DNA of 64,000 nucleotides from Octopus sinensis (GCF_006345805.1 NC_043014.1:36766001-36830000), one strand, 5' to 3'; counted from the stretch's first letter, positions 37,651 through 61,984 are shown. A program made the numbers and translations. The notes: generated by a model from the letters alone, not told the origin.

Positions 37651-37955
37651 TCATTCCAAACTGATAGTTCGCGCAATTTCTGTTCCAAATGCTTTGCATG
37701 TGAAAGTTGTGTAATCTAAGTCTTTCTCTGTTACAAGGTAGTAATACTCCGCATCTACCACAACAAAGCATTTGTCACTATGTGGAACTCTCTGTATTTT
37801 ATAGAGCTTAAGCCATAGATCGGGAGTCCCTATGGTCCATTTAAAAGTGACAGTTGGTGGAGAAGGTAACCCAACAATTGCTGTACATCTGAAGATCCAT
37901 GGTCTTACGAAGGTTTTATCACTGACCATTCCCAGAGACTGTATATGAGATTTCG
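37651..37955 (-). CDS. Gene B exon 3 (proximal cassette): C-like Ig domain ending ISLE*
   Basis: Acceptor ttttttccag|CG (G+CG = Ala), 305 nt. Contains PWIFRCTAIVGLP, FKW and KDLDYTTFTC. Confidence 0.85.
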
Positions 37956-39547
37956 CTGGAAAAAAATGAATCAATATATGTAATTCTTTCAACAATAAGC
38001 CTCACAATAAAATATTGTATATTTACACTGATGAAAATTACAATCTTCGTACAACACTGAAATATTTAACAACACTTCCGATGGACCCTTTTCGTTACTG
38101 GTTCCAAGTGTTCAAATATCTAACTTTATAACAAAAGCAATGCTTAAGCAACGTAGAGCCAGACTAATCTGACAATAACTATAGAGACACAGATACAATC
38201 ATGCACGTATATACATGTGTATGTATGTATGTATGTATGTATGTATGTATGTATGTATGTATGTATGTATGTATGTATGTATGTGCATGTTTGAAAGACG
38301 CTCCTTTTCTTTCAATAGAGTCTTCCTTGGAAAACATCTCCAATGGACGTGAGTTGTTTCCGAGCTTTCCATCTACTTTTCTACTGTTTTCGTCACTAAG
38401 GAATATTTTTAGATGTTTGGGAGAATTAATTTTTCAAAACTCTTTACTTTCATATCTATTTTATCTCTCCTCAGCTCTTATGCTGGACACAATCATTTAG
38501 AAAACGCGAACATTTGAAACGATGTACTCTTTACACTTTTACTTGTTTCAGTCAGTTGACTGCGGCCATGCTGGAGCACCGCCTTTAGTCGAGCAAATCG
38601 ACCCCGGGACTTAGTCTTTATAAGCCCAGTACTTATTCTATCGGGCTCTTTTGCCGAACCGCTAAGTGACGGGGACGTAAACACACCAGCATCGGTTGTC
38701 AAGCAATGCTAGGGGGACAAACACAGACAGACAGACAGACACACACATATATATATACATATATACGACGGGCTTCTTTCAGTTTGCGTCTACCAAATCC
38801 ACTCACAAGGCATTGGTCGGCCCGGGGCTATAGCAGAAGACACTTTCCCAAGATGTCACGCAGTGGGACTGAACCCGGAACCATGTGGTTGGTTAGCAAG
38901 CTAGATGTGTGAACTTTCGTAAACAAAGTTTGTATAGAATTGGAAGCTACCTGTTGGAATGTTTCAGCTATAACGAAAAAAACACATTCAAAGCGTTCTG
39001 AGACTATAAGGACACTGCAATTTATCCAACATGCTCCAAATTTTATCGATGATGATCTCGGAAAATCAATGGAGCCATCACTAAATAAAGTCTGCAATAC
39101 ACGGGAAATCCGTTTTATCCATACCAAACAGTTATTTAAGAAGGTTGAAAACCTTCACGAACATGACAAGCTTTCGTTCTTCTCTGATCAGAAGAACCTC
39201 AACCAGATGGTTATGTACTGATTCTTCTGATGCGTTGAGGTGCTAAGACCTGAATAGATGAAGTACGAAGTGGAAGTCCACCTTCACACAAATCCATGTA
39301 ACTCAAGAATGGATTTCAGGCAATCTTTACTATCATGCACCGCAAAACTTGTATTTCGACAAACATTTCTTTTTCTTATCGAATTACATTTCGCTTTCGC
39401 TAGATTAGAGTCATTTTATTAAATTACCAAATATTCCTTAAATGTTTCTCGCACCTTATACATCAATTAGCGAAGCATCCACTTCAATCTCCCGGAAGTA
39501 GTACAACTATGCACTGTACATATTTTCTAGAGAACTTTCAACACACT

Positions 39548-40036
39548 TAGAAATATTGAATTTCTAAATGTCTCAGAGAGACATGAGCGGTGGTGGGGCG
39601 ATATAGTGGTTGTATACTGTCAACTCAGCGTGACAAAGGAATCACACCACTGCTATTTAGCCCTAGGAAGCATCGACGCTTCCTGTCGGCTTTGACACAT
39701 TTCCTGTGTCCTTATATTTGCAAAGGGGAGGCAAGGACCCCCGCCAGCTAGGATTAGCACCTGAAGACATGCATGTTTCTGGGTCTTGCCCATCATCAGT
39801 CCAGGGTAGTAAGTCCTGCTAGCTGAGATGGCTGCAACCGCTTTTCAAATATATAATATTTTCAGTGAAATTTATTCACTGGTTACCAAAATTAGAAATA
39901 TTGAATTTTTAAAATGTCTCAGAGAGACATGAGCGGTGGTGGGGCGATATAGTGATTGTATACTGTCAACTCAACGTGACAGTCCCGTAAAGGGAATCAC
40001 ACCACCTCTATTTAGCCCTAGGAAGCATCGAATATA
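39548..40036 (-). mobile_element. Retrozyme-like insertion (~1.4 units of a ~346-bp repeat) carrying the hammerhead
   Basis: Flanked by direct repeat tttcaacacact (39536-39547, 40037-40048). Internal direct repeat 39548-39672 vs 39894-40031. Absent from the matching intron of gene A. Confidence 0.7.
39760..39805 (-). ncRNA. Type I hammerhead ribozyme, intact core, in intron 2 of gene B
   Basis: Minus strand: cctgga CTGATGA tggg caaga ccca GAAA catgcatg TC ttcagg. 6-bp stem I, 4-bp stem II, palindromic stem III, GUC site. Confidence 0.9.
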
Positions 40037-40184
40037 TTTCAACACACTGAAAAACAGAAATCTTAACACAAAAATAAGGTTGAACATGCCCAAGGCAACG
40101 CATGAAGAGCCTGCAATAAAAATACGCTTCTGAAAATCAATCAATAATGGAACTGCATTAGTAAAAGCAAGTAGTAAAACTGAC

Positions 40185-40505
40185 CTTTCATAAACTTAGC
40201 TTTCGAATTTTCTGAGGAAGTGCCACATTTGTAGTATGCTACATCTTTGCAAGTGGGATTTCGTTTCCAACAGGTAACTACACCTTCATTACAATAAGTT
40301 AAAGTACACTTGAAACCATCCTTACTGAATTTTGTTTCAAATATGCGTGTGGGCCTGTGGCATTCAAGATATACAACTATAACATCGTTTCTAAATAGTT
40401 TGAAATTAAGACGATTCCCCGCATTATACTGACATGTCATAGTTATTTGAGATGTCTCTCCAAAGCGAATACCATCATCAGGCGTCATTTTCGTTATCGC
40501 AAAAT
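40185..40505 (-). CDS. Gene B exon 2: V-like Ig domain (FAITKMTPDDG...TMTC...VTCWKRNPTCKDVAYYKC...FMK)
   Basis: Acceptor ttacttgtag|AT, donor AAAG|gtcagt, 321 nt. About 61% aa identity to the gene A V exon by hand alignment. Confidence 0.85.
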
Positions 40506-40558
40506 CTACAAGTAATAAATAAATGAGAGATAGATTTTTTTTTAATATATCATTTTAG

Positions 40559-40810
40559 AAGAAGAAGAAGAAGAAGAAGAAGAAGAAGAAGAAGAAGGAG
40601 GAGGAGGAGGAGGAGGAGGAGGTGGAGGAGAGGGAGGAGAAGAAGAAGAAGAAGAAGAAGAGGAGGAGGAGGAGGAGGAGGAGGAGAGGGAGGAGGAGGA
40701 GAAGAAGAAGAGAAGAAGAAGAAGGAAAGGGAGAAGAAGAAGAAGAAGAAGAAGAAGAAGGAGGAGGAGGAGAAGAAGAAGAAGAAGAAGAGGAAGAAGA
40801 AGGAGAAGAA

Positions 40811-40863
<53 letters not shown>
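40559..40863. repeat. (GAA/GGA)n tract upstream of the gene B V exon
   Basis: Direct inspection. Confidence 0.95.
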
Positions 40864-40865
<2 letters not shown>

Positions 40866-41102
40866 ATAAATAACGCCACTGAACAAGATTAACGAAAAGC
40901 AAACGACAGACCAAGCTAAGCGAGGAAACGGCAAGAAGTAAATGAGAAGAAGAGAGTGAACACAAGTCAAACGAAGGAAAAGGGAAAAGAGTGACAGTAG
41001 AAAACAAGGAAAGGTCTGCAGAGAAAATGAGTGAGGAGTTAGAAGCAAAAAAAACAATCAAAAAGAAAAGGAGCTGTCGAAAACAAAAGAAATAGACAGT
41101 AA

Positions 41103-41697
41103 GGCGGCGAGTTGGCAGAAATGTTAGCACGCCGGGCGAAATGCTTAGCGGTATTTCGTCTGTCGTTACGTTCTGAGTTCAAATTCCGCCGAGGTCGACT
41201 TTGCCTTTCATCCTTTCGGGGTCGATAAATTAAGTACCAGTTACGCACTGGGGTCGATGTAATCGACTTAATACCTATGTCTGTCCTTGTTTGTCCCCTC
41301 TGTGTTTAGCCCCTTGTGGGTAATAAAGAAATAGGTATATCGTCTGTCGTTACGTTCTGAGTTCAAATCCCGCCGAGTTTGACTTTGCCTTTCATCCTTT
41401 CGGGGTCGATAAATTAAGTACCAGTTACGCATTGAGATCGATGTAATCGACTTAATCCCTTTGTCTGTCCTTGTTTGTCCCCTCTGTGTTTAGCCCCTTG
41501 TGGGTAATAAAGAAATAGGTATATCGTCTGTCGTTACGTTCTGAGTTCAAATTCCGCCGAGTTTGACTTTGCCTTTCATCCTTTCGGGGTCGATAAATTA
41601 AGTACCAGTTACGCATTGGGATCGATGTAATCGACTTAATCCCTTTGTCTGTCCTTATTTGTCCCCTCTGTGTTTAGCCCCTTGTGGGTAAAAAGAA
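41103..41697 (+). mobile_element. Same SINE with its ~183-bp body triplicated, in intron 1 of gene B
   Basis: One head followed by three copies of tcgtctgtcgttacg...aaagaaa. Confidence 0.85.
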
Positions 41698-41885
41698 ACA
41701 TATATACCTGCCTGTACCGATATTCGGAAGCATGTACAGAAGAAGAATTATGTGTGAGACAGGAATAATAGGATGAAAAACAATTACACAAAATCATAGG
41801 TAATCAAAGGATAAAGGAGGCAAGACTAAAACTGAGTCGTGGAGGTGAAAAAAATAATATGTGACTGATTTAAGTCTTGACTTAC

Positions 41886-41934
41886 AGGCGGAGGTGTAAG
41901 AAGCCATCATCAGTATTTTTATAACTAACAGCAT
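41886..41934 (-). CDS. Gene B exon 1: signal-peptide exon MLLVIKILMMASYTSA
   Basis: ATG at 41934, GTAAGT donor, 49 nt, paralogous to 61936-61984. Confidence 0.8.
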
Positions 41935-42159
41935 TGTTGGTGTTATCGACAGATGGTGAAATGAGTGTCGGCTCCCAGCAACTGAAATATAACCAGTAAA
42001 TCCGCATGGTTTTATTTTGTACGATGTGGAAGGAATGAACGAAGAAAATTACAAAAAACATGATGATAGAATGTGTATGAACGTAGGCAAACTAATATCC
42101 TTCGCACCAGTAAAAGAATGTAAAACACCTGTTGCCATTATGATACTGTGAATACATCA

Positions 42160-42410
42160 ATAGAAAGCATTATAATTGAATTACATAGTGTGAATTATTG
42201 CGTAATAACTCGTCTATTATAAGTAGTGATTGATTTACGAACATAGCACAAATAGAAAGTTTGAAAGTTCTGAAACTGGTTTCTTTCTTTCCCTCGTTTT
42301 TATTAAATTTTTGGCTTTTATATTAAAAATGATCATTTCTTTAAAATTATTCTACAAAATGATGTATTTACAATATTTGTCTATGAAAAGTATTTTCGAT
42401 ATTGCATACA
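42160..42410 (-). promoter_or_regulatory. Conserved upstream block of gene B (putative promoter)
   Basis: Aligns with 62370-62630. Confidence 0.45.
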
Positions 42411-42461
42411 TATATATGTGGGTGGGTGTATGTTGTGTGGTGTGTGTGTGTGTGTGTGTGT

Positions 42462-42760
42462 GGAGGCACATGGCCTCGTGGTTAGAGCAGCGGACCCGCG
42501 GTCGACGGATCGTGAGTTCGAACCTCAGACCGGGCGATGTGTGTGTGTTTATGAGCGAAAACACCTAAACTCCACGCGGCTCCAGCAGAAGGTAATGGCG
42601 AACTTCTGCTGACTCTTTCGCCACAACTTTCTCTCACTCTTTCCTCTTTCATCTTGCAACTCACCTGCGACGGACCGGAGTTCCGTCCAGGTGGGGAACC
42701 TATACGCCAGGGAAATCGGGAAACAGGCACTTATGAGCAAGGCGTGGCTCGAGAAGAAGC
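42462..42760 (+). mobile_element. Third tRNA-derived SINE
   Basis: A-box tggcctcgtggttag and B-box gagttcgaacc. Confidence 0.75.
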
Positions 42761-44935
42761 AAACAAGATATATATATATATATATAAATATTTGATGTAG
42801 GATAACATTTTTTCGAAAAAAAATTTTAGCAATGGCCAGCATATTAAAAAATACCTTTAAAAGTTAAATTTATAAACAACTTATAAATAAGGGCAAACGA
42901 AAAAAATTCTAATGCCAAATATGCCGAAATTAGACACATTGTCCATAACCATTATAATTTTTCACAATACGCACGCTACTCGAAAATGGTCGACAGGAAT
43001 TTCTAAAAAATTCCATTATTACCAACCCTAGGAATAATATATATTGTCCACAGTTTCGTACAAGTGGTTACACAGAACTCAAGATATTACGACGTGCTTG
43101 CAGCAAGAAAAATCATTCATAATTTTCTCGATACGCTTCGCGAAAAGCGCATGGTTCGTAGTAGGGCTCGATCACTGAAATACATGGACTGGGATTTGCA
43201 CAGAATCAGCGTGTATAAAGGCCCCACAGATCTCTAACTTACTTCAAAGAGCACGTCAAATGGTTCCAGACAATGGTGAAAACATGGACAGGAGTTGCAC
43301 ATACACAGATAACACTTAGGTATCTGACGGACTGCGAGGAGCAGGCCAAATGTTTCCAGATAATGGTAGCGGTTTTACAGAAGTACTTGGCCTAAATATT
43401 TTCAAGAAACATCGGATTAGAGATGGTGAATTTTGAGCCTGGATAGTTGTTACAAAGTACTGTAACTTCCGTGAGCTATTGAAATTGCGCTGAATTAAGC
43501 ATTCACTCCATCAAAGATGCTTTTTTCTCATTTTCTCTCGATGTTCTCACTCTTGAGTATCTTACTGCTCAGTTATAGATATTGAAAGCCATATCGCTCT
43601 ATCTAAGATGCAGGAGGAGGAACCGTATCTGCAAATGCGGGAAGTGACCCTATAATGGTGTCAGCACTTTACCGAATGCGTGCGAGATGGTAGCATGATT
43701 GCGCGTTATTGATACGTCAGGTTGGTATTGTTTAAATTAAAATTGAGATGAATTTGCGATCATCGTAACCAGTCTCACTTAAAAATGTGTTGAGCAAAAG
43801 ATGGTTTGAAAGATTAAACGATGATGATTAATGTATTACCGACTAACGGTTAACCTCGTCATAAGAATTCTCTGAGTAGATTGAAATCAATGCAAGGTTT
43901 CCCGGTTCAAGAGATCTATCAACACAAAACATTTATTTCTTGTTGAGTTGTGGGATGGTGAGAGTGATGATGCGAAGGTACGTGAAAATACTGTGCAAAG
44001 GCTTCCCAATAAACCAGTTAGGCAGATATGAACGTCAGTTAAACATATCTTACTCCAGCTATTCTTCTTCACCGAGCTTTTTTCTTGGGACAAGGGCTGA
44101 TAGAAATATATGAGGTTTGATTTTTGAATGTTTCTAGCTACTCACCCTCTTTACTGGCGGGACGTTGAAGTCGGTGAAATGTCAAATTTCTTATTTAGAT
44201 GGAAAATAGGGGCCATGACTGACGATGAAATAGAAAACCTTCTTGATATCTTCAGGGTGTTGAAGCGAAGATTCTACTTGGTGATAATGCCCGAATGTAG
44301 GAATGTTTCAAAAAGTACTTTTGGGATGAGGTCACATTGCCTGATTGCTATGAATTTTACAATCATGTCTATGTGTGTGCAGCCAGCAACCGAACTTGTG
44401 ATGTCTATGAGTGTGCAGCCAAAAACCAAGAAGGCTGCAGAGTGACGAAACGTCTGGTCAGATCTCATTCAGTCCATGCTTTTCTAAATTTTAGCATTGC
44501 CTGTGTGGGATAAATTTTGGGATTCAGCGATTCAATACGTCAATCGAAAATATCAGCACGACGCTTATCTTTAACAAGCAAAAGTATGAATTCATCTTTT
44601 CCTGTCTGGAGGTTATGATAAAGGATTCATACGATGAACAAGGTTGAAAGATTTGAGAACATAGGTTATTTTCCTCTCTAACCAAGTCTTAAAGGGCCAC
44701 TTGAAAAAGAACGTAAAGGAAGATAGTGAGTTACTGTCCTTCAATATATTTTTAAAACGGTGGAAGAAATGGCGGTATTATGGTTAGATGGTTACAGGCT
44801 AATTATGTGACTGTAGGTTGGCGGTAAAATCTGAAGAAACGCATTTTTATTTCATGTATAAGATTAATCAGGTTTTGTTACGTTTCATTCTGTAGACTCG
44901 TTATTGTGCTATTATTAAATGATATTATAATTAAT

Positions 44936-45166
44936 GGCGGCGAGCTGGTAGAATCTTTAGCACGCCGGGCGAAATGCTTAGCGGTATTTCGTCTGCCGTT
45001 AGGTTCTGAGTTCAAATTCCGCCGAGGTCGACTTTGCATTTCATCTTTTCGGGGTCGATTAAATAAGTACCAGTTACGCACTGGGGTCGATATAATCGAC
45101 TTAATCCGTGTGTCTGTTCTTGTTTGTCCCCTCTGTGTTTAGCCCCTTGTGGGTAGTAAAGAAATA
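44936..45166 (+). mobile_element. Same SINE
   Basis: TSD gatattataattaat. Confidence 0.9.
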
Positions 45167-45879
45167 GATATTATAATTAATTAATTCTTATTTTCCAAAA
45201 GGCAACCTTTCTCTTCTACTATACTTGGATGTTGTTTTAGAACAGGGAACACTCCGTTATTTTCTTTGAAAGGACCTGTTGGATGGGCTCGTGATGCATA
45301 ACTGTACTCGTATTTATATCATTGACAGAGGAAAACCGACTGCTGCGATCGCTGAGATTGCCCACTCACGTGAATTCGCCTTGTTTGAGGCACCTCAACG
45401 ACAAGCATCCTGTAGCCACACAACAGCTGATTCTCCAGTGAAAGATATATATAGAATATCAGTGTCTATTCAGGCACGGATGTCCCATATAGCCAGTGGG
45501 CTTATTCAGGACATATTGTGAAATCACGTGATATGGCAGGTCAGGTAGCCCCAAAAGACGATTACCGTGTATTCAGTGCTTGAATAGACACTTATATTCG
45601 TTAACGGAAGAGATTCGGCTGTTATGTTGCTACTGGATGTCTGCCACTGTGCAATCACGTGATCTAGCAGTTCCGGTGGTCGTATCAGAGATAATCGTCT
45701 GTCAAAGATATAAACACGAGTGCCTTTATGCTACACCATCTCATATGACAGGTCCTCTCAAGGTAAAGAATGCAGTATTCCGTGTTCAATATTTCTTTAT
45801 TGGTTTTTTTTTAGCTCACCCTTATATTCGATATAAATCCATTTTATGTTCCACAGTTTGAGCGTCCAGTTTGACCCTA

Positions 45880-46000
45880 CTTGAAGGGTCAGATTTCCTT
45901 TACAAACAAGGAGAGAGGTTCACAATTAAAACCAACTTCACCTGTGCCTCTGAGAACCTAATTTATGTAATAACTTGCTCGAGCAAGTTATTTGTTTTCG
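45880..46000 (+). mobile_element. PLE GIY-YIG fragment, same family as 12190-12790
   Basis: LEGSDF...IKTNFTCASENLIYVITCS. Confidence 0.7.
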
Positions 46001-46283
46001 TACACATTCGCTTGCTTTCTCCCAAAAGATCTAATGTTCTTAGCTTAGAATTTGAGGGCAAACCACATTTAAACAATCTCAAGTGTAACCGGCCGAAACT
46101 GTAAGGATGACCTGCATACTTGACTGATGAGAGAAGGCTGCGAATAACCCGTCCTAGTTTTTCCTGTCCGCCTTTTTGTTGTTTTTCTAGCCCGGCTTTT
46201 TATTGTCTATCTGCTCAGATGCTTTATTGTCGTCTGTAGCGCTCTTGTTCCATTTTTGCATTGATATATATATATATATATAT

Positions 46284-46495
46284 ACAGGGTGCGGTGGATA
46301 AACAATCATCTAAATAACCCAGAAATGAAAATAACTCATTTTAACAGATATATTTACCAAAATTACATGAAAATAACTTGAAACACTAAAGTGTAAATTT
46401 ATACAATAAAATCGCCATTGACTTCAACCACAGCCTCCAGACGACTTCGGAATTCTTCTGGACTCTTCTGGGCGGTCTCCTTGATTAATTTGATG
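46284..46495 (-). mobile_element. Tc1/mariner 3' end fragment
   Basis: TA-CAGGGTG terminus and FRSRLEAVVEVNGDFI* on the minus strand; a related end lies at ~55318. Confidence 0.55.
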
Positions 46496-46704
46496 ATTGC
46501 TACGGTAAAGACAATCAACTTCTCTTATTCAAATTCAAAATGGCTGAAGAGTAGCATGGCACTTCAAATTCAGAGTACCAACGAATTTGAATCAAACTGT
46601 TTTGATTCATACATGTAACTCCCAATAAATTTGTTGAGTGCCCTTCTTTCTTTTGTACACTCACTCGTGTATATATATATGTATGTATATAGATAGATAG
46701 ATAA

Positions 46705-46761
<57 letters not shown>

Positions 46762-46898
46762 CAGATAGATAGGTAGGTAAGTAGGTAGGTAGGTAGGAAG
46801 GTAGGTAGGTAGGTAGGTAGGTAGGTAGGTAGGTAGGTAGGTAGGTATTGATGGATGGACGGATGGATGGATGTGTGTATGTATGCATGTGTATATAT

Positions 46899-46944
<46 letters not shown>

Positions 46945-48061
46945 ATATGAAAAGTATGTACTCTTAATATTGAAAACAACAACCAATAAATGCCGAACAA
47001 AACTCAGAGCATTGTGTAGATTAAATATTTATTTATCACAAAAACGATTACTGTGATTTCGGAGTTCCGCAAAAAATGTCTATTAAACAGCAATCTGTAA
47101 AAATGAAGAATTGTTATCATATGGATGGACTATGCTAAGGTTATGTACGAGGTAAATTATATGCACATTTACATACATATAGATCTATATAAATGTGTGT
47201 GTGTGTGTGTGTGTGTGTGTGCGGGTGTGTGAATATATATTAATGATATTATTATTTACAGATTAGTTAATAACTCAGATAAAATGTAGGGAAAATAAGG
47301 ATAAACACAAGTTTATATTATCCAAATAACCATTATGCGGGCTTCAACATTATGGTTGTTTGGATCCCTGCAGCTGGTGATCCAATGATATTTATATACT
47401 CAGTCACGACAGGTCACAGCAGGAACACGTTATTGCATTAAGTTACTGATAACCATGTCCAGAGCTGGATAGATGGCAAGGCATTTTATAAGTATTTGGG
47501 GAATAGAAAGGAAGCCATTGCGTCCCAGTATTACTATATTTCCCTTTCTCCCATTAACTTGTAGCAGTCGTTGCGGTACTCATTTCGGACCCACATAGAA
47601 TACTTTGAATTTCGTCGTACTATTATGTATTAAACCGTTTCTTTCTTTTTTTTTTTCACCTATTCGAGTGACACTATTATCTACTTTCTACCTTTTCGAC
47701 ACAGTGGTGTTAACCAACTAATTTTAAAATTAGGTAACCCTTCGAGCAGTTTTCACTTATTGAAAGCTTTCATTTCAAACCCAGAAGTGCAGGATTCGCA
47801 TACCTCTACAAAGAAATCTAGAAGGATACGTATGGGTATGTTTCCGGTATTGAAGAGGATAGTAATTTTAACATGAAGTGTAGCGTAGATGCATTCCAGA
47901 AGTTTTGAGACTTTTTTTTAGGTGAGACAGTTACACCTGACCTAGATCATAGGAATTTTACTATAACATTACTACAGGGACACAACGTACCAACCAATCC
48001 AAAACTGAAAACACGATCTCGCGATCGCGAGTGCAGCTTTCTATGCACAAGGCCATACACC

Positions 48062-48099
<38 letters not shown>

Positions 48100-48440: not shown

Positions 48441-48669
48441 TTTCTTTACTGCCCACAAGGGGCTACACACAAAGGGGACAAACAAGGACAGACAAACTGA
48501 TTAAGTCGATTATATCGACCCCAGTACGTAACTGGTACTTGTTTAATCGACCTCGAAAGGATGAAAGGCAAAGTTGACCTCGGCGGAATTTGAACTCAGA
48601 ACGTAGCGGCAGACGAAATACTGCTAAGAATTTCGCCCGGCATGTTGAGGTTTCTGCCAGCTAGCCGCC
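48441..48669 (-). mobile_element. Same SINE
   Basis: Sequence similarity to 23250-23475. Confidence 0.85.
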
Positions 48670-50957: not shown

Positions 50958-51191
50958 AAGGCGGCGAGCTGGCAGAATCGTTAGCACGCCGGGCGAAATG
51001 CTTTAGCGGTATTTCGTCTGCCACTACGTTCTGGGTTCAAATTCCGCGGAGGTCGACTTTGCCTTTCATCCTTTCGGGGTCGATTAAATAAGTAGCAGTT
51101 ACGCACTGGGGTCGATATAATCGACTTAATCCCTTTGTCTGTCCTTGTTTGCCCACTCTATGTGTAGCTCCTGGTGGGCAGTAAAGAAATA
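50958..51191 (+). mobile_element. Same SINE in the 3' region of gene A
   Basis: TSD agaaatatacatgca; absent from the gene B cassettes. Confidence 0.9.
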
Positions 51192-51390
51192 AGAAATATA
51201 CATGCATACCCGCAAGCAAAAGACACATATATGTGTAAAAGTATACAAATACACATGTCACAAACAAATGCAAAAACGAATGCATATATATATTTAAAAC
51301 TAAGCGTGCTCACTGATCTGAGGCTAAATAGCAACAATTAAAAACATTAACCAGGTTGAAACAAAGATAATCAGCTCACCTTTTCTCACG

Positions 51391-51689
51391 TCATTCCATA
51401 TAAATTATTCGCGAAATTTTATCTCCAAATATTTCGCATGTATAATTTGTTATGCCTAAATCTTCCGCTCTTACAAAATAATCCGCGCTTACCTCAACAA
51501 AGCATTTGTCACTAGATGGAACTTTCACTGTTTCTTGGTCAAAAGACATGCCGTTAGACCTCTCTATATCCCATACAAAACTGGCATCACCTTGAGAGGG
51601 TAACCCAACAATTGCTGAACATCTGATGATCCATGGATCTAGGTTTATATTATTATGGAACAATTTCAGACTCTTTATACGAGATCTCA
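51391..51689 (-). CDS. Gene A exon 3: C-like Ig domain, terminal coding exon (PWIIRCSAIVGLP...FVW...DKC...EDLGITNYTC...YME*)
   Basis: Acceptor ctctttctag|TG (G+TG = Val) in phase with exon 2. Cys...Trp...Cys Ig pattern. Stop at the same position as in gene B. Confidence 0.85.
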
Positions 51690-51744
51690 CTAGAAAGAGA
51701 GTGAATTAAAATATGTAAATCTTTAAACAATAAAATATTGGATT

Positions 51745-52699: not shown

Positions 52700-53565
52700 A
52701 TTCAACCTCTTTTGGCGTTGAAACATCTAACAAGTCATAACAAGCTTTCATCGGTATTTCTTCTCTTTCTTCAGTATATCTAGTCTTCAACTGGTTCAAA
52801 TGCCGTTTCTGCTATCCTATTTGACCTTTTATTATGTACATCATAATTATTCTTTTCGTCACTATACCGTCCTCCCAACATTGTCTTCCATTTTCATATA
52901 TTTTGAAATGAATTTTATCTCCCACATTAAAATAATTTGTTTTATTTCTTGGGTTTTCCCTATAAGTTTTTTGTTGGTAACTATTTATCAATAATTGATT
53001 TCATCTTCCGGGCAAACATTAGCTCTGCAGGTGACTTGCCTGTAGAGGTGTTCGGGTTAAGTGTTACCCTGTAAACTCTTAAGAATTGAGTCAGTGTTGC
53101 ATCATTGCCTAATTCCTTTCCTGCTTTTTTTAGTACCCGTTTAAATATATCTTCGAACCTTTCTGCTTGCCCATTCGATCTCTCACAGAAATTTCAAATT
53201 CGTACCCCGAAAACTGCATTCCGTTATCCGATAATATTGTGTTCGGGACACCGTATCGCGCAAAAAGTTCGTGAAGAAACTTCATTGTTACCTTCAATGT
53301 TGGTTGACTGCATTTACATATCTCAGACTACCTGGTGTAGCTCCCTACTATGATCAGATAATACGCGCCGTTTACCAGTCCAGCAAAATCTATATGTAGC
53401 CTGGACCACGGACTGCCTGTCTGAGGCCACGATTGGAATTTCGCCGGTGGTGACTTTGCTGCGAGAGCACAACCTCTGCAAGATATCACCATTTGTTCAA
53501 TATCATGGTCCATAGCAGACCAATACACGTGACTCCTCATTACTGATTTCATTCTTGAAAAACCT
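52700..53565 (-). mobile_element. Gypsy integrase relic in intron 2 of gene A
   Basis: HPGFSRMK...CRGC zinc finger, RLHIDFAG, FARYGVP...SDNG. Confidence 0.85.
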
Positions 53566-54687
53566 GGGTGTCCCATATGAAATTAACTTAATACAGGCTT
53601 TGGTAGTGTGGCTGGCACTACAACTCTTTGTGCATACATCAACACATTATCACAAAGAGAAAAATGGTTCACATTTATTTTCTTTTACCTTCAACGTTTC
53701 TTTCCTCTTTGCAATAAATTTGTCATTCTCCGATTTTAGTTTTATATCTTAAACAGTTACTTACAGCACCCGAATGAAATTCAGGTGTCGGAGTGGAAAT
53801 TTAGTGCACGAGGACATGCGATACAAGTAGCATCAGATGTCCAAGTAGAAGAAAGCTAATTAACATCTGCAAATACATAGGAAAACCGTTTGATCTATAT
53901 CAAACAGTTATTTAAGGAGCTTAAAAACCCTCACGACCATGGCTAGCTTTCGTCCTTCTCAGATAGTTATGAGCAGATGTTTTGATGCGTTGAGGTGCTG
54001 GAAACAGCTAATTAAGCCCTGTATAGATGAGTTACGAAGTGGACGGTCATATGTGTTTCGACATAACCTTTGCATCGTCACACAAACCCATGTAGTCCAA
54101 GAATGGATGATAAGCAATCCTTACAATCATGCAACACAAAACTTGTGGCCTCCAATCTCCTCAGATGATCTACTAGGTTTCAAACATTGCTGAAAGAGAA
54201 ACTCATAAAGATCCTCATAATACCACAGCTTCACTGAAGGCCGGTATTGTCCAAATGACGACCGAAATTGATAAAGTCCATTTAATGCAGGCATGTCAAC
54301 AATTCCGGTTTCGCATCGAAGAATCAAAGGTGAAAACGGATTTACAGAATAATAGTTTTATAAGAAAGCTTATTGAGAACTCATGCACAATTTTTTATCG
54401 AACTACATTTCGTTTTCGCTAGATTAGAGTAATTTTATTAAATTACCAAATATGTCCTTAAATGTTTCTCGCACCTTATACATCAATTAGCGAAGGCATC
54501 CACTTCATTCTCCCGAAAATAGCACAACTACACACTGTACATATTTTCTAGATTACTTTAAACACTATGAAAAACAGAAATCTAAAAACAAAAGTAAAGT
54601 TGCACAGGAAAAACATGCAATAAAAATAACACTTCTGAAAATCAATAATAATGGAAATGCATTAGTGAAAAAAATAGTAAAACTAAC

Positions 54688-55008
54688 CTTTCATAAACCT
54701 AGGTTTCGAAACTGCTATCATAGTGCCACATTTGTAGTGTGCTACATCTCTGCAAGTGGGATTTCGTTTCCAGCAGGTAACCTCACCTTTATTGCAATAA
54801 GCTAAAGTACAGTCGAAACCATCCTTATAGATAATTCTTTTAAATCTTTTTGTGGACTTGTAGTATTCCATATATACAACTAAAACTTCGTTTCTCAATA
54901 GTTTGAGATTAAGAAGGTTCTTCATCTTATACCGACATGTTATAGTCATTTTAGATGTCATTCCAATGTCAATACCATTAGCGGGCGTCATTTTTGTTAT
55001 AGCAAAGT
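54688..55008 (-). CDS. Gene A exon 2: V-like Ig domain (FAITKMTPANG...ITC...VTCWKRNPTCRDVAHYKC...FMK)
   Basis: Acceptor cttacag|AC, donor AAAG|gttagt, 321 nt open frame. B-strand Cys and D-x-A-x-Y-x-C F-strand motif. Same length as the gene B V exon. Confidence 0.85.
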
Positions 55009-55060
55009 CTGTAAGTAGTAAACAAATGAGAGAAAGATCTTTAAAAAATATATAATTTTA

Positions 55061-55228
55061 GAAGAAGAAGAAGAAGAAGAAGAAGAAGAAGAAGAAGAAG
55101 AAGAAGAAGAAGAAGAAGAAGAAGAAGAAGAAGAAGAAGAAGAAGAAGAAGAAGAAGAAGAAGAAGAAGAAGAAGAAGAAGAAGAAGAAGAAGAAGAAGA
55201 AGAAGAAGAAGAAGAAGAAGAAGAAGAA
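55061..55228. repeat. Pure (GAA)n tract upstream of the gene A V exon
   Basis: Direct inspection; same position as in gene B. Confidence 0.95.
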
Positions 55229-55404
55229 TATATATTAGAAGAAATGAGGTACTCAGAAATTCGGATGGAAAAAATTGCCGACAGTCCATGAGAGGTTACA
55301 TTTCTGAAGTGACATACAGGTTGCGGTGAATAAATGTCTTCTAAATTACGTAAAATTGAAAATAACGGTGACATCTCCATTTTAACAGATATATTTACCA
55401 AAAT

Positions 55405-55481
<77 letters not shown>

Positions 55482-55484
<3 letters not shown>

Positions 55485-57430: not shown

Positions 57431-57551
57431 GGATGAGCAATTAATACTGGTCATCCTTTTTGCTAGAAGAAGATCTGCTATGGTCTTATATGATACACCA
57501 CTGGTTTTCAATTCATATTAATCAAATTAATATTCAATTTTTCACCCTTAT

Positions 57552-57606
<55 letters not shown>

Positions 57607-58254
57607 TAGCAATTCGTATAAAATTGCATCAATGACTTGAACTTGAATAAGTGGTTTCACATAAATGGGGATACATTAAAAAGGTTTGTTGTTATTATTA
57701 TTACTGTTTGACTATTATAATCACGTTTGTTGGTTCCTCGTCAGGGAAACGTTGTTGTGTTGCATTTGTTAAATAATTGTAAACTGTAACCCTCCCCCTT
57801 TCGGAGAAGGGGCTTTGGTTATTGTTTTAAAATTGAATTGTGTCCCTGTTTGGGGAAATTGACAATATTTTCACCGTCTTTACGGAAGCATTTTTGTTAA
57901 AGTGTCTTCGATAGAAGAAAGTCCCAAAATGAATTTCGCTGCAGCCGTACACTTCTATACAAGAGGGAGGACAAGATCCAATTGATCGAAATTTCAAGAG
58001 ACGGGCCTACAATTCCAGTCTGTTATATATTTTGAGTATTGTTATCACTAGCGATATCAAGATATAACTTTCTATTTTGTATTTTATGTGTAGATGTATA
58101 TATATATATAGATGTACATGTAATATGTACACATATATATATACACATATATACATGCATAATATATCTACCCATACACACACACGTACACACACACACA
58201 CATACATAGAGGCAGGTGTGGCTGTGTGGTAACAAACTACGTTCGAAGATACTG

Positions 58255-59551
58255 TACTTGATATGGGCGGTAGTGCCTTGCCGGTCTATGGCCTACCTTC
58301 AACAAACCGGGAAGGCACAAACACTCTGTCTTCACATTTGCTGCGTGAGACATGTTTTAATGTCGACGAGCTTGCCGAGTACATAGCCGACAATGAGCCA
58401 AAGCTCCTTCCAGAACAGAAGTTCGCTTACAACTCCGTTGTTAATTCAGTCCGGGCCAAAGCTGTCGGATATTTTTCCTGGACGCTCCTGGGGGCACTGG
58501 GAAAACTTTTCTCAACAAATTAATATTGGCTGAGATTAGGCGAACACAAGGCATTGCCCTAGCTGTGGCATCATCTGGAATTGCGGCTACTTTGTTGCCA
58601 GGCGGCAGGACAGCTCACTCCACTTTCAAGCTTCCGCTTGACTTAGCGAAGACTGAGACACCAACTTGCAACATCAGTAACAGCTCCGATCAGGCAGAAG
58701 TCTTCAGACGATGCAGGCTTATCGTTTGGGATAAATGCACGATGGCCCACAGAGGTGCTCTTGAGGCACTAGATAGATCTCTCAGAGACATCAAACACTC
58801 TTCAGCTCCCATGGGAGGCATAACACTTCTTCTTTCAGGTGACTTCCGACGAACAATTCCCGTTATTCCCAAAGGGACTAGAGCTGATGCAGTAAGTGCG
58901 TGTCTGAAGTCATCCACATTGCGGCCACTGGTGAAGACTCTCAAACTTCACACCAATATGCGTGCTCATATGCGACGTAATATCACATCAGCAGCATTTC
59001 CTCACACCCTCCTTGCACTTGGCGAAGGCAAAATACCAGGGGGTGAAAATGGTAATATTGCCATCGATTCCATTTGTACCATTGTCAAAACGCCTTCTGA
59101 TCTCAGAGATGCAGTGTTCCCAGATCTACAAGCTAATTATCAGAATATGGATTGGATTGGCCAAAGGCAAATCTGGCCCCGAGGAATAAAACTGTTCACC
59201 ATATTAATGATGAAATGCTAAAACTCATTCCTGGGGAAGTCTATGTATATAAGTCTATCGATACAACTCCTGACCCAGAGGACGTCATCAACTATCCAAT
59301 AGAGGTACTCAATTCCTTTGAGCACCCCGGACTACCACCACACATTCTCAAACTTAAGTTGGTCCCCTATAATGCTCATTAGAAATTTGGTTCCCCCAAA
59401 ACAATGCAATGGCACACGTTTGATCGTTAAGTCCTTATCTCCCACCGTAAACTTATATCAATATTTGCCTGAATAATCATCATAATTCAGTGTAATCATT
59501 AACAGTACTTTCAAGCAATTCAGCCCCGAGCATCGCCGGGCAATTCTGCTA

Positions 59552-59552
<1 letters not shown>
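58255..59552 (+). mobile_element. Helitron 3' part with frameshifted PIF1 helicase
   Basis: ASSGIAATLLPGGRTAHSTFKLP and LSGDFRRTIPV motifs; hairpin cccgagcatcgccggg then CTAG|T terminus. Confidence 0.95.
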
Positions 59553-59589
<37 letters not shown>

Positions 59590-59782
59590 TAGATTTTTTG
59601 CCCACACACTCATGTGCATACATACGTATATACGTATAGGCATACGCACATATAGAAATTTATATTTGCAGATATATACGCGTGCATTAATACATGTACA
59701 CTCATAGCCTTCCATTCACATACATACATACGCGCTTGTGTGTGTGCACATATATCCACGCTTACACATACACGTGCATATA

Positions 59783-59962
59783 TTAGTTTGGTGCATAATT
59801 ATTGCAGCTTTTTCAATAAATTTTATTCAACAAAAAAATAACATTTAACAAAAACCTCTTTAAATGATTATCCTGGAGCATATTCACCATCTACTTTATG
59901 CTTGGTGTTTTGTTTAAATTTTTTGTTGAATAAAAAGTCGCAATAATTCTGCACCAACCTAA
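59783..59962. mobile_element. Mariner-derived MITE
   Basis: TIRs ttagtttggtgcataattattgc / gcaataattctgcaccaacctaa with TA flanks. Confidence 0.8.
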
Positions 59963-60012
59963 TATATATTATAATAATATATATATATATATATTAATAT
60001 TATATATATATA

Positions 60013-60047
<35 letters not shown>

Positions 60048-60181
60048 TCCACTCACGCTTACATACTAATACCCATATGTACACATACAAATATATACCT
60101 ACAAATACACACATACGGATATGTATGTGTACGCATATGCACACATACATAAATACAAATATATACATATATATATTATAT

Positions 60182-60212
<31 letters not shown>

Positions 60213-60289
60213 CATAACAAGAAGGTATTAGGTAGGGTGAAAAAGGGGTGGGAGAAGACTCCCTGAAATATTATTATTATTTATTGTCT

Positions 60290-60745
60290 TTGCACAGCTA
60301 TCGCTGGAGATGTACTACGGTTCCACCTGTTCACTACCAATCAATTAAGGTAACACCCCTTATTTTTCGAGCACCATCCGGAGTATTCGAGCGGTTCCAA
60401 CTAGTGCTGTTTTCTGCAAGTGCTCCACTCATATTGCAGCCCCTATTTGTTCCATGTACTTCTCAAGATTTTTACTCGCTCTTTCCAAGGCTCCAAACAA
60501 TTATTGGTACTACTACCACTTTTTTCATCGATCGCAACTGCTTGACCTCCCAAGCTAACCAGTCATATCTATTGACTTACCTTTCTTCCTTATCGCATAT
60601 CTGGTTGTAAGCCGGGCATGCTATATATATGATCCAGCATCGTTTGCATTATTTCTCAATTAACACTTTGTCCGGCTTCCTATTCTCTATCTCATGGTCG
60701 CATTGAATCATAAAATCCCATAGGATCTTTGCATTATCATTTTCG
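60290..60745 (-). mobile_element. RLE-clade (R4/Dong-like) non-LTR 3' fragment
   Basis: KILWDFMIQCDHEIENRKPD...VVVPII...LQKTALVGTARILR. Confidence 0.8.
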
Positions 60746-60812
60746 ATGATGCCTTCGGGTTTATGTTCGTACTACTACTTTGCTCTGTTAAGTCCATACT
60801 TGTTGCAAAGTT

Positions 60813-60877
<65 letters not shown>

Positions 60878-60879
60878 GC

Positions 60880-61620
60880 ACAGTATCTAGCCTTGAAAAC
60901 GCATATTTGGCGCGATGGGGACATATCGGAATTTTCTCAGCATGCTTGTTTACGAGGTTTTCATTACTCAGCAGGAGGCAAAGATTGCATGTGTTGGATA
61001 GAATATTGTGTAGGTGTGAATTTTTTGTTATTGACCGTTCCATCCTGCAGTCTCTGTATTAGGTCTGCGGGTGAAGTTGCGTGCCGTCTGTTTACCTTAC
61101 GGAGTGATGAGATATGGCTGCGATAACGAACTTTAAATTGATTTTCTGAGATACATATGTATCTGTATTTTTGTTGCAGTATGGTAATTGTGCATTTGTA
61201 TATTATGTTTTTGGGTTTCTTTTTTTTTAAATATTAGTTCACGAGCAGACATGCGGAGGTGCAGTTATTTGTACTATTTTTATTTTTGTATTTATCTGGT
61301 ACCTTTTTGTTTTTGTAATGTTCTGTTTGACTGTCGGTGACTAAAGCGTTCCTGATGTTGCATTCTTTTTTACTGATTCTGTTTTTTAGTTTTTGTTTTG
61401 ATCTTATTGTAACTGTCGGGGACATTATCTAAGTTTTTGTGATTTTCGTTTTGTTCATTTTTGTTACTGGGCCTATATCCTGTGTTGTTTTGATCTGTAT
61501 GTTCATTGTCTACAGACGTTGTTTGCATGTTTATTTTCCTATTGTTGCATTTATGTATGTAGTACTCCATGTTATTTGATGCTGCGTATGATATTTTCAC
61601 TGTATGCTTGTTTAATATAC
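60880..61620 (-). mobile_element. Second Naiad-like PLE GIY-YIG relic
   Basis: KVRYRSH and CNLCL...CPHRAKY motifs. Confidence 0.55.
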
Positions 61621-61935
61621 AATGGTATCTCCAAATTCAAACTTGAAAGTATATAATAATACTACCGATAGCACTAGGTAATTCTGAATGTGGATAAGCT
61701 TTATACTGTACTCTACAACATTCCTAACGGAATATAACACGCCTATGTGTGGGGGGGGGTGTATATACATACCTATGTGTACGTATTGGTATGCGGATTA
61801 TGTGTGAGACAGAGAAATATTAGGATGAAAAAATTACACAACAGCATAGGCAAGCAAAGGACGAATGAGACGAGGATAAGATTGAGTCGTGGAAGTGAAG
61901 AAAATAATATATGACTGCTTTTAGTCTTGACTTAC

Positions 61936-61984
61936 AGGCCGTGGTGTAAGAAGTCATCATCAGTATTTTTATAACTAACAGCAT
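61936..61984 (-). CDS. Gene A exon 1: signal-peptide exon MLLVIKILMMTSYTTA
   Basis: ATG at 61984, 16 codons + T, then GTAAGT donor. Near-identical to 41886-41934. Phase 1 matches the V-exon acceptor (T+AC = Tyr). Confidence 0.8.

What the first reader, a model, noticed from the sequence alone, without database searches (positions are those of the whole stretch)
37651..61984. Tandem family of secreted V+C two-Ig-domain proteins hidden across split ORFs
Seen: six exons join in frame through phase-1 GT-AG junctions into 222-aa and 224-aa proteins (leader, V-like, C-like, stop), with no TM segment or lectin domain. Established: invertebrate variable Ig effectors such as snail FREPs/VIgLs and chordate VCBPs pair Ig domains with a lectin or chitin-binding domain. 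Inference: a bare secreted V-C protein, shaped like an antibody light chain, would be a different design. The CWKRNPTCxDxAxYxC motif recalls the W-x-x-P motif I remember from VIgL domains. Immune, gamete-recognition, skin/mucus or venom roles are all open.
Basis: partly seen in the sequence, partly recalled or inferred. Interest (0 to 1): 0.85.

Follow-up and report, generated by a model that had tools for sequence, protein, structure and literature searches.

The report
Octopus secreted two-Ig gene cluster
The window holds two real, neighbouring octopus genes for small secreted proteins made of two immunoglobulin-type domains; they belong to a fast-evolving gene family found so far only in octopods, present in databases as "uncharacterized" and with no known function.

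Summary
On the minus strand, six exons join through phase-1 GT-AG junctions into proteins of 224 aa (gene 1) and 222 aa (gene 2): a 16-residue hydrophobic leader, a V-like domain, a C-like domain, then a stop. Pfam and PDB sequence searches do not recognise either protein. An AlphaFold2 model of the O. bimaculoides orthologue (pLDDT 93) shows two tandem Ig domains that match CD4 D1D2, Fab/TCR chains, butyrophilin and VCAM-1.

- Gene 1's C exon lies in a ~4-kb unit repeated three times. One copy is frameshifted.
- A decayed V exon lies at ~8 kb.
- About 40 relatives exist, and every named one comes from an octopod. Many carry GPI-signal-like or transmembrane tails.
- In the window genes, the stop codon sits 14 nt before a vestigial donor that a paralogue uses to reach its tail exons.

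Framework codons are under purifying selection (ω≈0.3). The other codons evolve faster than neutral (ω≈2).

Best reading: tail-less soluble members of an octopod-restricted, birth-and-death Ig-superfamily cluster that act as extracellular binding proteins. "A new design" is overstated, and the VIgL link is unsupported. Expression and function are untested.

The parts
61936..61984 (-). Gene 2, exon 1: start codon plus 16-residue hydrophobic leader MLLVIKILMMTSYTTA. Ends in phase 1 before GTAAGT.
   Evidence: The leader sits in ~700 bp that is paralogous to gene 1's leader region (~75% identity) and is not a dispersed repeat. The same leader type starts many family members.
54688..55008 (-). Gene 2, exon 2: V-like Ig domain (phase 1 to phase 1). 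Contains CWKRNPTCRDVAHYKC.
   Evidence: Orthologous exon in O. bimaculoides at L003 9998-10303, 79% aa identity.
51391..51689 (-). Gene 2, exon 3: C-like (7-strand) Ig domain with an in-exon TGA stop.
51371..51382 (-). Vestigial 5' splice site AAAAG|GTGAGC, 14 nt after gene 2's stop (approximate coordinates). It aligns with the donor that a paralogue uses to reach its tail exons.
41886..41934 (-). Gene 1, exon 1: leader MLLVIKILMMASYTSA. Phase-1 donor GTAAGT.
   Evidence: Identical leader peptide in O. vulgaris at L002 8639-8686.
40185..40505 (-). Gene 1, exon 2: V-like Ig domain. Contains CWKRNPTCKDVAYYKC.
   Evidence: 98% identical to the first 102 residues of the O. vulgaris model P0002.
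37651..37955 (-). Gene 1, exon 3, copy C1: C-like Ig domain with TGA stop. This is the copy nearest the V exon.
   Evidence: The exon is identical to O. vulgaris copy A.
33672..33975 (-). Copy C2 of the C-like exon. Identical to C1 except for a 1-bp deletion that shifts the frame. It is a pseudo-exon, a recent copy-number gain, or an assembly error.
29573..29877 (-). Copy C3 of the C-like exon. It has an intact frame, an intact acceptor and a TAA stop. It differs from C1 by 7 nonsynonymous and 0 synonymous changes, and corresponds to O. vulgaris copy B.
28262..39833 (.). Tandem triplication, about 4.0 kb per unit (96-98% identity). Each unit carries one C-like exon and an AATAAA about 1.04 kb after the stop. 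O. vulgaris has two units.
7900..8070 (-). Decayed V-like pseudo-exon. The acceptor and donor are recognisable, but there are internal stops and deletions. It is the remnant of a third family member, with a counterpart in O. bimaculoides at L001 18927-19208.

Best explanation
Both loci are intact three-exon genes (signal-peptide exon, V-like Ig exon, C-like Ig exon). Each encodes a basic, cysteine-rich, soluble extracellular protein of about 24 kDa made of two tandem Ig domains.

They belong to a tandemly arrayed Ig-superfamily family that is detectable only in octopods. The ancestral family architecture appears to be a two-Ig ectodomain followed by a stalk and a GPI-signal-like or transmembrane tail. 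The window genes, and the three neighbouring units in O. vulgaris, lack the tail because a stop codon lies inside the C exon, just upstream of the old donor site.

The cluster evolves by birth and death: duplication of whole genes and of the C-exon unit, and decay of some copies. The Ig framework is conserved while the remaining residues change faster than neutral.

The most likely mode of action is binding. Either the proteins act as soluble recognition proteins for a fast-changing target such as a pathogen or parasite surface, or they act as soluble ligands or decoys for the membrane-anchored paralogues.

Shown here: exon structure, conservation, fold, family distribution and selection pattern.
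Inferred: signal-peptide cleavage, secretion, loss of the tail, any binding function, and expression itself.
For: Gene structure
- GT-AG, phase-1 junctions and open frames.
- The same structure in an O. sinensis RefSeq paralogue and in O. vulgaris and O. bimaculoides.

Fold
- AF2 model of the orthologue P0001 with a 35-sequence alignment: pLDDT 93.4, pTM 0.83. Domain 1 has 9 strands and domain 2 has 7.
- Foldseek gave 396 PDB matches at E<=1e-3. The top ones are CD4 D1D2, Fab/TCR chains, butyrophilin and VCAM-1 D1D2.

Secreted
- The hydrophobic leader is the only hydrophobic segment.
- The same leader type is included in RefSeq models of paralogues.
- No tail exon is detectable in the window.
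- The stop lies before the vestigial donor, and that donor is mutated GT>CT in gene 1.

Family
- 41 relatives at E<=1e-3. Every named one is from O. vulgaris, O. sinensis, O. bimaculoides or Argonauta hians, and members cluster on one chromosome per species.
- C-termini are of short, GPI-signal-like and TM types.

Selection
- Substitutions among gene 1, gene 2 and the orthologue avoid columns conserved in distant members (odds ratio 9.2, p=5e-10).
- Framework ω is 0.26-0.33. Non-framework ω is 1.9-2.4 (p=9e-5 to 0.0125).
- Non-framework 0-fold divergence is 3.7-6.5 times 4-fold divergence.
- Non-framework dN also exceeds intron and flank divergence.

Birth and death
- Frameshifted C2 copy, decayed V remnant, and the O. 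bimaculoides orthologue of gene 2 broken in its leader and C exon.
Against: - No RNA evidence was available. No near-identical protein from a transcript assembly turned up in the 5.8-billion-protein search.
- Neither gene appears as a correct model in O. vulgaris. P0002 is a 75-kb chimera.
- Overall ω is 1.3-1.7, and exons are no better conserved than introns between species. On its own, that is also what a decaying gene would show.
- The leader exon of the O. bimaculoides orthologue was not found. However, 2.4 kb of the 10 kb upstream there are assembly gaps.
- The structure model is of the orthologue (71% and 62% identical), not of the window proteins.
- No signal-peptide predictor was available.
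- The selection tests are simple counting methods on about 200 codons. The three comparisons are not independent.
- Nothing here identifies a ligand, a tissue or a function. Family accessions were absent from one O. vulgaris skin-mucus proteome.
Confidence: 0.6

Rival explanations
1. One or both loci are unexpressed relics in a birth-and-death cluster. They still have open frames only because they are young duplicates, and they make no functional protein.
For: - Overall dN/dS is at or above 1, and exon divergence equals intron divergence.
- The O. bimaculoides orthologue of gene 2 is clearly broken.
- Decayed copies lie in the same window.
- There is no correct gene model in O. vulgaris and no transcript-derived match.
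Against: - Both genes keep all three exons open, all splice sites, the start codon and the leader.
- Framework codons show ω of about 0.3, and substitutions avoid family-conserved columns (p=5e-10).
- The gene 1 orthologue is intact in O. bimaculoides and identical or nearly identical in O. vulgaris.
- Non-framework sites change faster than 4-fold sites, introns and flanks. Neutral decay does not produce that.
Confidence: 0.15
2. The proteins are not soluble. Alternative splicing joins the C-like exon to undetected downstream exons that encode a stalk and a GPI or TM anchor, as in most paralogues.
For: - Most relatives have hydrophobic C-terminal tails. Several loci have short and long isoforms.
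- Gene 2 keeps a good donor sequence just after its stop.
Against: - The in-frame stop lies upstream of that donor in gene 1, gene 2, the O. bimaculoides orthologue and the three neighbouring O. vulgaris units. Splicing there would change only the 3' UTR.
- Gene 1's donor is GT>CT.
- tblastn with eight tail types found nothing significant in the window.
Confidence: 0.05
3. The proteins are humoral immune recognition molecules, working like snail FREPs or amphioxus VCBPs but without a lectin module. Diversified germline copies, and possibly alternative C exons, would bind pathogen or parasite surfaces.
For: - Secreted Ig architecture, a tandem multigene cluster, copy-number difference between close species, and faster-than-neutral change outside the framework.
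- C3 differs from C1 by 7 nonsynonymous and 0 synonymous changes, and has its own acceptor, stop and AATAAA.
Against: - No expression, challenge or binding data.
- No homology to FREP/VIgL or VCBP was detected.
- The same selection pattern fits reproductive proteins or self-recognition ligands.
- The 7:0 count is not significant on its own (about p=0.18 under neutrality, my calculation).
- C2 is frameshifted.
Confidence: 0.25
4. The proteins are soluble ligands or decoys in a cell-cell recognition system formed with the GPI- or TM-anchored paralogues (adhesion, neural or epithelial recognition, or gamete interaction). They are not pathogen sensors.
For: - The family's majority architecture is that of cell-surface V-C2 adhesion or recognition molecules. 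Structural matches are to such ectodomains: CD4, butyrophilin, VCAM-1.
- The window genes look like tail-less derivatives of anchored forms.
Against: - No interaction data.
- Rapid non-framework evolution is less usual for neural wiring molecules, though it is usual for gamete and self/non-self recognition.
Confidence: 0.3

Closest known systems
Octopod 'uncharacterized protein LOC...' family. Examples: O. bimaculoides LOC128250270, LOC128250272, LOC106880713/15 and LOC106882073; O. sinensis LOC118766815/16; O. vulgaris CAI9737731-38; Argonauta hians GAB1601880.
   Same: - Direct homologues, with HMMER E-values from 1e-112 to 1e-10.
- Same leader, same phase-1 three-exon core, same conserved cysteines (five in domain 1, three in domain 2), and the same tandem clustering.
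- LOC128250270 is the orthologue of gene 1 (71% identity, syntenic). LOC128250272 is the orthologue of gene 2.
   Different: - Many members continue into Thr-rich stalks and GPI-signal-like or TM tails. The window genes stop right after domain 2.
- None has a described function.
- The window genes themselves are unannotated, or mis-joined as in P0002.
V-C2 type two-Ig ectodomains of vertebrate cell-surface molecules: CD4 D1D2, butyrophilin/B7, VCAM-1 D1D2. From my knowledge, also the CD2/SLAM family.
   Same: - An N-terminal 9-strand V-like domain followed by a 7-strand C-like domain. Foldseek E values are 3e-6 to 1e-4, with TM up to 0.54.
- Like the CD2/SLAM family (my knowledge), the octopod family mixes TM and GPI-type members in tandem clusters.
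   Different: - No detectable sequence homology.
- Extra conserved cysteines.
- The C-strand Trp of domain 1 is replaced by Phe or Leu.
- The window members are soluble.
- The structural similarity is at the level of the superfamily fold, not of a specific family.
Small secreted invertebrate two-Ig proteins, such as the C. elegans ZIG proteins and Drosophila ImpL2 (my knowledge, not tested here).
   Same: A signal peptide plus two Ig domains and nothing else. This shows that the 'bare secreted two-Ig' design is already known.
   Different: - No homology was detected in the profile search.
- Those proteins are conserved regulators, not fast-evolving tandem families.
Snail FREPs/VIgLs and amphioxus VCBPs.
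   Same: Secreted, Ig-containing, multigene and diversified. This is a possible functional analogy.
   Different: - Both are defined by a C-terminal lectin or chitin-binding module, which is absent here.
- No gastropod or amphioxus protein was retrieved.
- VCBPs have two V domains, not V plus C.

Membership tests
Immunoglobulin superfamily (fold level) | Greek-key beta sandwich of 7-9 strands per domain | tested here: met
   AF2 model of the orthologue P0001: pLDDT 93.4, with 9 + 7 strands. Foldseek matches are almost all Ig two-domain structures. The test was done on the orthologue, not on the window proteins.
Immunoglobulin superfamily (fold level) | Cysteine pair on strands B and F, plus D-x-[GA]-x-Y-x-C before the F-strand Cys | tested here: met
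   - Domain 1: C41 and C110, with D-V-A-Y/H-Y-K-C.
- Domain 2: C147 and C210 (C208 in gene 2), with D-x-x-x-T-x-x-T-C.
- All are invariant in the family.
- The disulfide bonds themselves are inferred.
Immunoglobulin superfamily (sequence level, Pfam ig / I-set / V-set / Ig_2 / Ig_3) | Score above a Pfam gathering threshold | tested here: not met
   - The window proteins give only Ig_2, E=0.098, 13 bits against a cut-off of 27.
- Among 35 family members, a few weak hits appear (ig, best E=4.8e-5).
- The PDB profile search returned nothing at E<=10.
V-set domain (domain 1) | Extra C' and C'' strands; invariant Trp on strand C | tested here: inconclusive
   Nine strands including a C'/C''-like pair are predicted. 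However, the strand-C Trp is replaced by Phe/Leu, the F-G loop is short, and there is no V-set Pfam match.
Antibody/TCR-type chain (light-chain-like) | C1-set constant domain; V region completed by a separate J segment with recombination signals | tested here: not met
   The whole of domain 1, including its last strand, is in one exon that splices directly to the C-like exon. Fab and TCR chains match only as generic V+C pairs, behind CD4. Recombination signals were not searched for.
FREP / VIgL (snail variable Ig + lectin proteins) | C-terminal fibrinogen, C-type lectin or galectin domain after the Ig domain(s) | tested here: not met
   The stop codon falls directly after domain 2, and there is no such Pfam domain.
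FREP / VIgL | Detectable homology of the Ig domains to snail IgSF domains | tested here: not met
   The profile search of 1.84 billion representatives found only octopod proteins plus two spurious bacterial hits. A direct comparison with FREP sequences was not possible.
VCBP (amphioxus) | Two V-type domains plus a chitin-binding domain | tested here: not met
   The architecture is V-like + C-like, with no chitin-binding domain.
Octopod LOC128250270-type two-Ig family | Significant full-length homology, shared leader, phase-1 exon structure and the 5+3 conserved cysteines | tested here: met

The most novel reading that the evidence does not exclude
The cluster is a cephalopod humoral recognition system. 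It would be a germline-diversified family of soluble V+C Ig proteins under positive selection, in which one V exon can be paired with alternative, diverging C-exon cassettes (C1 or C3). Such a system would fill the role that FREPs, VCBPs or Dscam play in other invertebrates. No such system is known in cephalopods.
Probability: 0.12. Interest if true: 0.8.

Novelty: new member of a known kind. Interest (0 to 1): 0.5.

Why it matters
A 2026 review of invertebrate immune diversification found in the searched library lists no diversified recognition family for cephalopods. My other searches of that library found no paper on this family.

This family is octopod-restricted, tandemly arrayed and fast-evolving. 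It has soluble, GPI-type and TM members, which makes it a concrete candidate for immune, self/non-self or gamete recognition in a lineage with complex biology and poorly known extracellular recognition molecules.

It also shows that current octopus annotations miss or mis-join such genes, because the domains fall below Pfam thresholds and the leader exon is tiny.

If the genes turn out to be ordinary adhesion-type IgSF members, or are unexpressed, the interest is modest.

Tried and rejected
- I gave the spliced 224-aa and 222-aa proteins to structure prediction and to the search of protein representatives. I did not work around this. I used the orthologue P0001 plus single-exon translations instead.
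- **First AF2 model.** The 6-sequence alignment left domain 1 unmodelled (pLDDT about 27). Its Foldseek matches were only generic sandwiches and were discarded.
- **Sequence-family searches.** Pfam and PDB sequence searches returned nothing usable.
- **Leader as a repeat.** I tested whether the leader is part of a dispersed repeat. It is not.
- **O. bimaculoides leader.** The search for the leader of the gene 1 orthologue failed, but assembly gaps make this inconclusive (timed out, 31, 69).
- **Tail exons.** No GPI or TM tail exon was found in the window.
- **Last word-indexed family search.** It returned only 6 proteins and added little.
- **Spurious hits.** The weak hits P0039 and P0042 are bacterial Ig-like repeat proteins.
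- **Species check.** The O. sinensis locus L004 does not overlap the window, so the species was not settled. The window is 97.5-99% identical to O. vulgaris.
- **Literature.** Searches by locus and accession numbers, by octopus plus IgSF terms, and in a skin-mucus proteome's supplements found no characterisation.
- **tRNA scan.** No tRNA genes were found in the window, which contains the 184-bp repeat.

Full report
**1. What is in the sequence**

The window is AT-rich, microsatellite-laden eukaryotic DNA. It is 97.5-99% identical to Octopus vulgaris chromosome OX597833.1. It therefore comes from the O. vulgaris species complex, either O. vulgaris itself or O. sinensis.

| Gene | Leader | V-like exon | C-like exon | Product |
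|---|---|---|---|---|
| Gene 1 | 41886-41934 | 40185-40505 | 37651-37955 | 224 aa |
| Gene 2 | 61936-61984 | 54688-55008 | 51391-51689 | 222 aa |

- All donors are GT, all acceptors are AG, and all four junctions are phase 1.
- The two proteins are 54% identical.
- Each starts with MLLVIKILMM[AT]SYT[ST]A. This is the only hydrophobic stretch in the protein.
- Each ends with a stop codon inside the C-like exon.
- The mature proteins would be about 24 kDa with a pI of about 9. Gene 1 has ten cysteines and gene 2 has nine.

**2.

- tblastn with the two proteins found two more copies of gene 1's C-like exon, at 29573-29877 and 33672-33975. It also found a decayed V-like exon at about 7900-8070.
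- The three C-exon copies lie in a tandem triplication of a ~4.0-kb unit: 28262-31862, 32358-35846 and 36344-39833, at 96-98% identity. Each unit has the same acceptor, a stop, and an AATAAA about 1.04 kb downstream.
- C2 equals C1 minus one T, which shifts the frame. It may be a very recent gain or an assembly error.
- C3 is intact. It shares five derived nonsynonymous changes with the second of only two copies in O. vulgaris. It differs from C1 by 7 nonsynonymous and 0 synonymous changes.
- The C-exon duplication therefore predates the split between the window's species and the O. vulgaris reference. Copy number differs between them.

**3. Is the leader exon real?**

- The leader lies within about 700 bp that is paralogous between the two genes at ~75% identity. 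It does not occur elsewhere in the window, so it is not a repeat.
- O. vulgaris has the identical gene 1 leader peptide.
- Many relatives begin MLLAMMILMMASYSSAY or similar.
- The O. sinensis RefSeq model LOC118766816 has the same structure. It has a 49-nt leader exon ending in phase 1 before GTAAGT, then a phase-1 V exon, then a phase-1 C exon.
- NCBI's model of the gene 1 orthologue in O. bimaculoides (LOC128250270, P0001) starts at the internal Met of the V exon. However, the frame upstream of that Met is open and conserved back to the same acceptor.
- In that assembly, 2.4 kb of the 10 kb upstream are gaps. The missing leader there is therefore uninformative.
- No signal-peptide predictor was available. 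Cleavage after ...SYT[ST]A is my inference.

**4. Fold**

- Sequence methods fail. The best Pfam hit is Ig_2 at E=0.098, and the PDB profile search finds nothing.
I therefore modelled the orthologue P0001, aligned with single-exon translations and with relatives.
- With six sequences, only domain 2 folded.
- With 35 sequences (alignment A3), the model reached mean pLDDT 93.4 and pTM 0.83.
  - Domain 1 has nine strands, including a C'/C''-like pair and the usual short helical turn before strand F.
  - Domain 2 has seven strands.
- Foldseek against the PDB gave 396 matches at E<=1e-3. CD4 D1D2 leads (2.7e-6), followed by Fab and TCR chains. The best TM-scores are for butyrophilin (0.53), VCAM-1 D1D2 (0.52) and BTN2A1/BTN3A1 (0.54).
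- Both domains are therefore Ig domains in a V-like + C2/I-like arrangement.
- The strand-C tryptophan of domain 1 is replaced by Phe or Leu.
- Family-wide, five cysteines are conserved in domain 1 and three in domain 2. That even total suggests one interdomain disulfide. The strand positions make an interdomain bond between the E-F turn of domain 1 and the loop before strand E of domain 2 plausible. I could not inspect coordinates, so this is conjecture.

**5. The family**

- The word-indexed search found only two close relatives.
- The exhaustive profile search of 1.84 billion representatives found 41 proteins at E<=1e-3.
- Every named one is from O. vulgaris, O. sinensis, O. bimaculoides or Argonauta hians. 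Two weak non-octopod hits are bacterial Ig-like repeat proteins.
- Members cluster on one chromosome in each species, with runs of consecutive locus numbers.
- In the O. vulgaris locus, three further V+C units lie just beyond the window's left end. All are phase 1 and all stop right after domain 2.
- The relatives have three kinds of C-terminus:
  - ending right after domain 2;
  - a hydrophobic C-terminal tail preceded by small residues, which looks like a GPI signal (my reading, no predictor run), sometimes after a Thr-rich stalk;
  - a true TM segment with a cytoplasmic tail (O. vulgaris LOC115221679, and a 420-aa Argonauta protein).
- The O. vulgaris model P0002, which contains gene 1's V exon, spans 75 kb and joins it to another unit's V exon. 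It is a chimera.

**6. Why the window genes have no tail**

I aligned the 3' ends of C exons from eight copies.

- A conserved AAAAG|GT[GA]A[GA] donor appears in all of them.
- The O. sinensis paralogue uses this donor to reach its tail exons.
- In gene 1, gene 2 and the O. bimaculoides orthologue, an in-frame stop lies 14 nt upstream of that donor. The three O. vulgaris neighbour units also stop upstream of it.
- In gene 1 (C1 and C3) the donor GT has become CT.
- tblastn with eight tail types found no tail exon in the window.
- I infer that these genes are constitutively tail-less, soluble derivatives of an anchored architecture.

**7. Selection**

- Plain Nei-Gojobori dN/dS is 1.25-1.73 in every comparison of gene 1, gene 2 and the orthologue.
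- Exons are no better conserved than introns between the window and O. bimaculoides, at about 88% against 81-90%. Taken alone, this could mean decay.
- I therefore split codons by conservation among distant family members only, which is an independent criterion.
  - Substitutions in the trio avoid conserved columns (odds ratio 9.2, p=5e-10).
  - Framework codons have ω=0.26-0.33.
  - The remaining ~138 codons have ω=1.9-2.4 against pooled synonymous change (p=9e-5, 0.0125 and 0.011).
  - 0-fold divergence at non-framework codons is 3.7-6.5 times 4-fold divergence (p<=0.006).
- Non-framework dN (0.23-0.26 for gene 1 against the orthologue, about 0.52-0.59 between the paralogues) also exceeds the non-coding divergence of introns and paralogous flanks, which is roughly 0.11-0.21 and 0.3.
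- Caveats: these are counting methods on few sites, and the comparisons are not independent.
- The pattern fits a conserved Ig scaffold with a rapidly changing surface, as in recognition proteins. It does not fit neutral decay.
- Real decay is visible nearby for contrast:
  - the frameshifted C2 copy;
  - the V remnant at ~8 kb, which has a counterpart in O. bimaculoides;
  - the O. bimaculoides orthologue of gene 2 (LOC128250272), which has a 4-nt deletion in the leader, a 1-nt insertion before the V-exon Met, and most of its C exon missing.

**8. Mechanism**

- Shown: gene structure, conservation, fold, family distribution and selection pattern.
- Inferred: secretion, and function as soluble extracellular binding proteins.
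- Two readings are about equally likely:
  - recognition of a fast-changing foreign target, that is, humoral immunity;
  - soluble ligand or decoy for the anchored paralogues in a self-recognition, adhesion or gamete system.
- Nothing here tells tissue or ligand.
- Family accessions did not occur in one O. vulgaris skin-mucus proteome. The window genes themselves are unannotated, however, and could not have been identified there.

**9. Comparison with what is known, and novelty**

- Membership in the Ig superfamily is met at fold level and fails at Pfam threshold level.
- The proteins are not FREP/VIgL or VCBP. The defining lectin or chitin-binding module is absent, and no homology was detected.
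- They are not antibody-type chains. No J segment is needed, and the match to Fab chains is generic.
- A bare secreted two-Ig protein is an established design (the C. elegans ZIG proteins, my knowledge).
- Relatives already sit in databases as uncharacterized or 'Ig-like domain-containing' proteins.
- I found no paper on them.
- Verdict: a real, correctly described pair of genes. They are new, so far unannotated members of an unstudied, octopod-restricted branch of a very well known superfamily. Their evolutionary dynamics are interesting, but their function is unknown.

Noticed in passing
window 58526-59221 (+), inside intron 1 of gene 2: ORF of 231 aa matching the PIF1-like helicase family (E=6e-48). 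It is probably a Helitron-type transposon fragment. It helps explain why this intron is ~6.9 kb here against ~2.5 kb in O. bimaculoides.
   Followed up: partly
window 63109-63579 (+): ORF matching the mariner-type Transposase_1 family (E=3e-24).
   Followed up: partly
window 53130-53576 (-), inside intron 2 of gene 2: Retroelement integrase fragment (Integrase_H2C2, E=2e-9).
   Followed up: partly
window 41150-41698; dispersed copies near 4052-4360, 23251-23427, 25562-25678, 44983-45171, 48441-48621 and 51008-51189: A 184-bp element present as three tandem copies in intron 1 of gene 1, with about 80-90% identical copies elsewhere in the window and in the O. bimaculoides loci. It looks like a SINE-type repeat. 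ARAGORN found no tRNA genes anywhere in the window.
   Followed up: partly
window 40557-40862 and 55060-55228: A long (AGA)n/(TCT)n microsatellite lies just upstream of the V-like exon in both paralogues, 52 nt upstream in each. It has therefore been kept in the same intronic position since the duplication.
   Followed up: no
window 13171-20713: About 7.5 kb with very low G+C (0.22-0.36) and strong strand skew that has no counterpart in the aligned O. vulgaris locus. It is an insertion or an expansion of unknown nature. It contains a 169-aa ORF (18471-18980, -) with no Pfam match.
   Followed up: no
L002 (O. vulgaris OX597833.1) 44890-47747, 66390-69241, 85206-87073: Three more V+C units of the same short type, spaced about 20 kb apart, lie immediately beyond the window's left edge. 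The annotated O. vulgaris gene P0002 fuses parts of several units over 75 kb.
   Followed up: yes
L003 (O. bimaculoides) 7432-7477, 9998-10303, 11507-11569: The orthologue of gene 2 (LOC128250272) is a pseudogene in O. bimaculoides, although it is annotated as a 113-aa protein. It has a 4-nt deletion in the leader, a 1-nt insertion in the V exon upstream of the Met, and a C exon reduced to its last ~60 nt.
   Followed up: yes
window genes compared with P0001: The syntenic orthologue of gene 1 has a V domain slightly closer to gene 2 (74.5%) than to gene 1 (71%), while its C domain is much closer to gene 1 (69% against 49%). This points to very fast change of gene 1's V exon, or to exchange between paralogues.
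   Followed up: no
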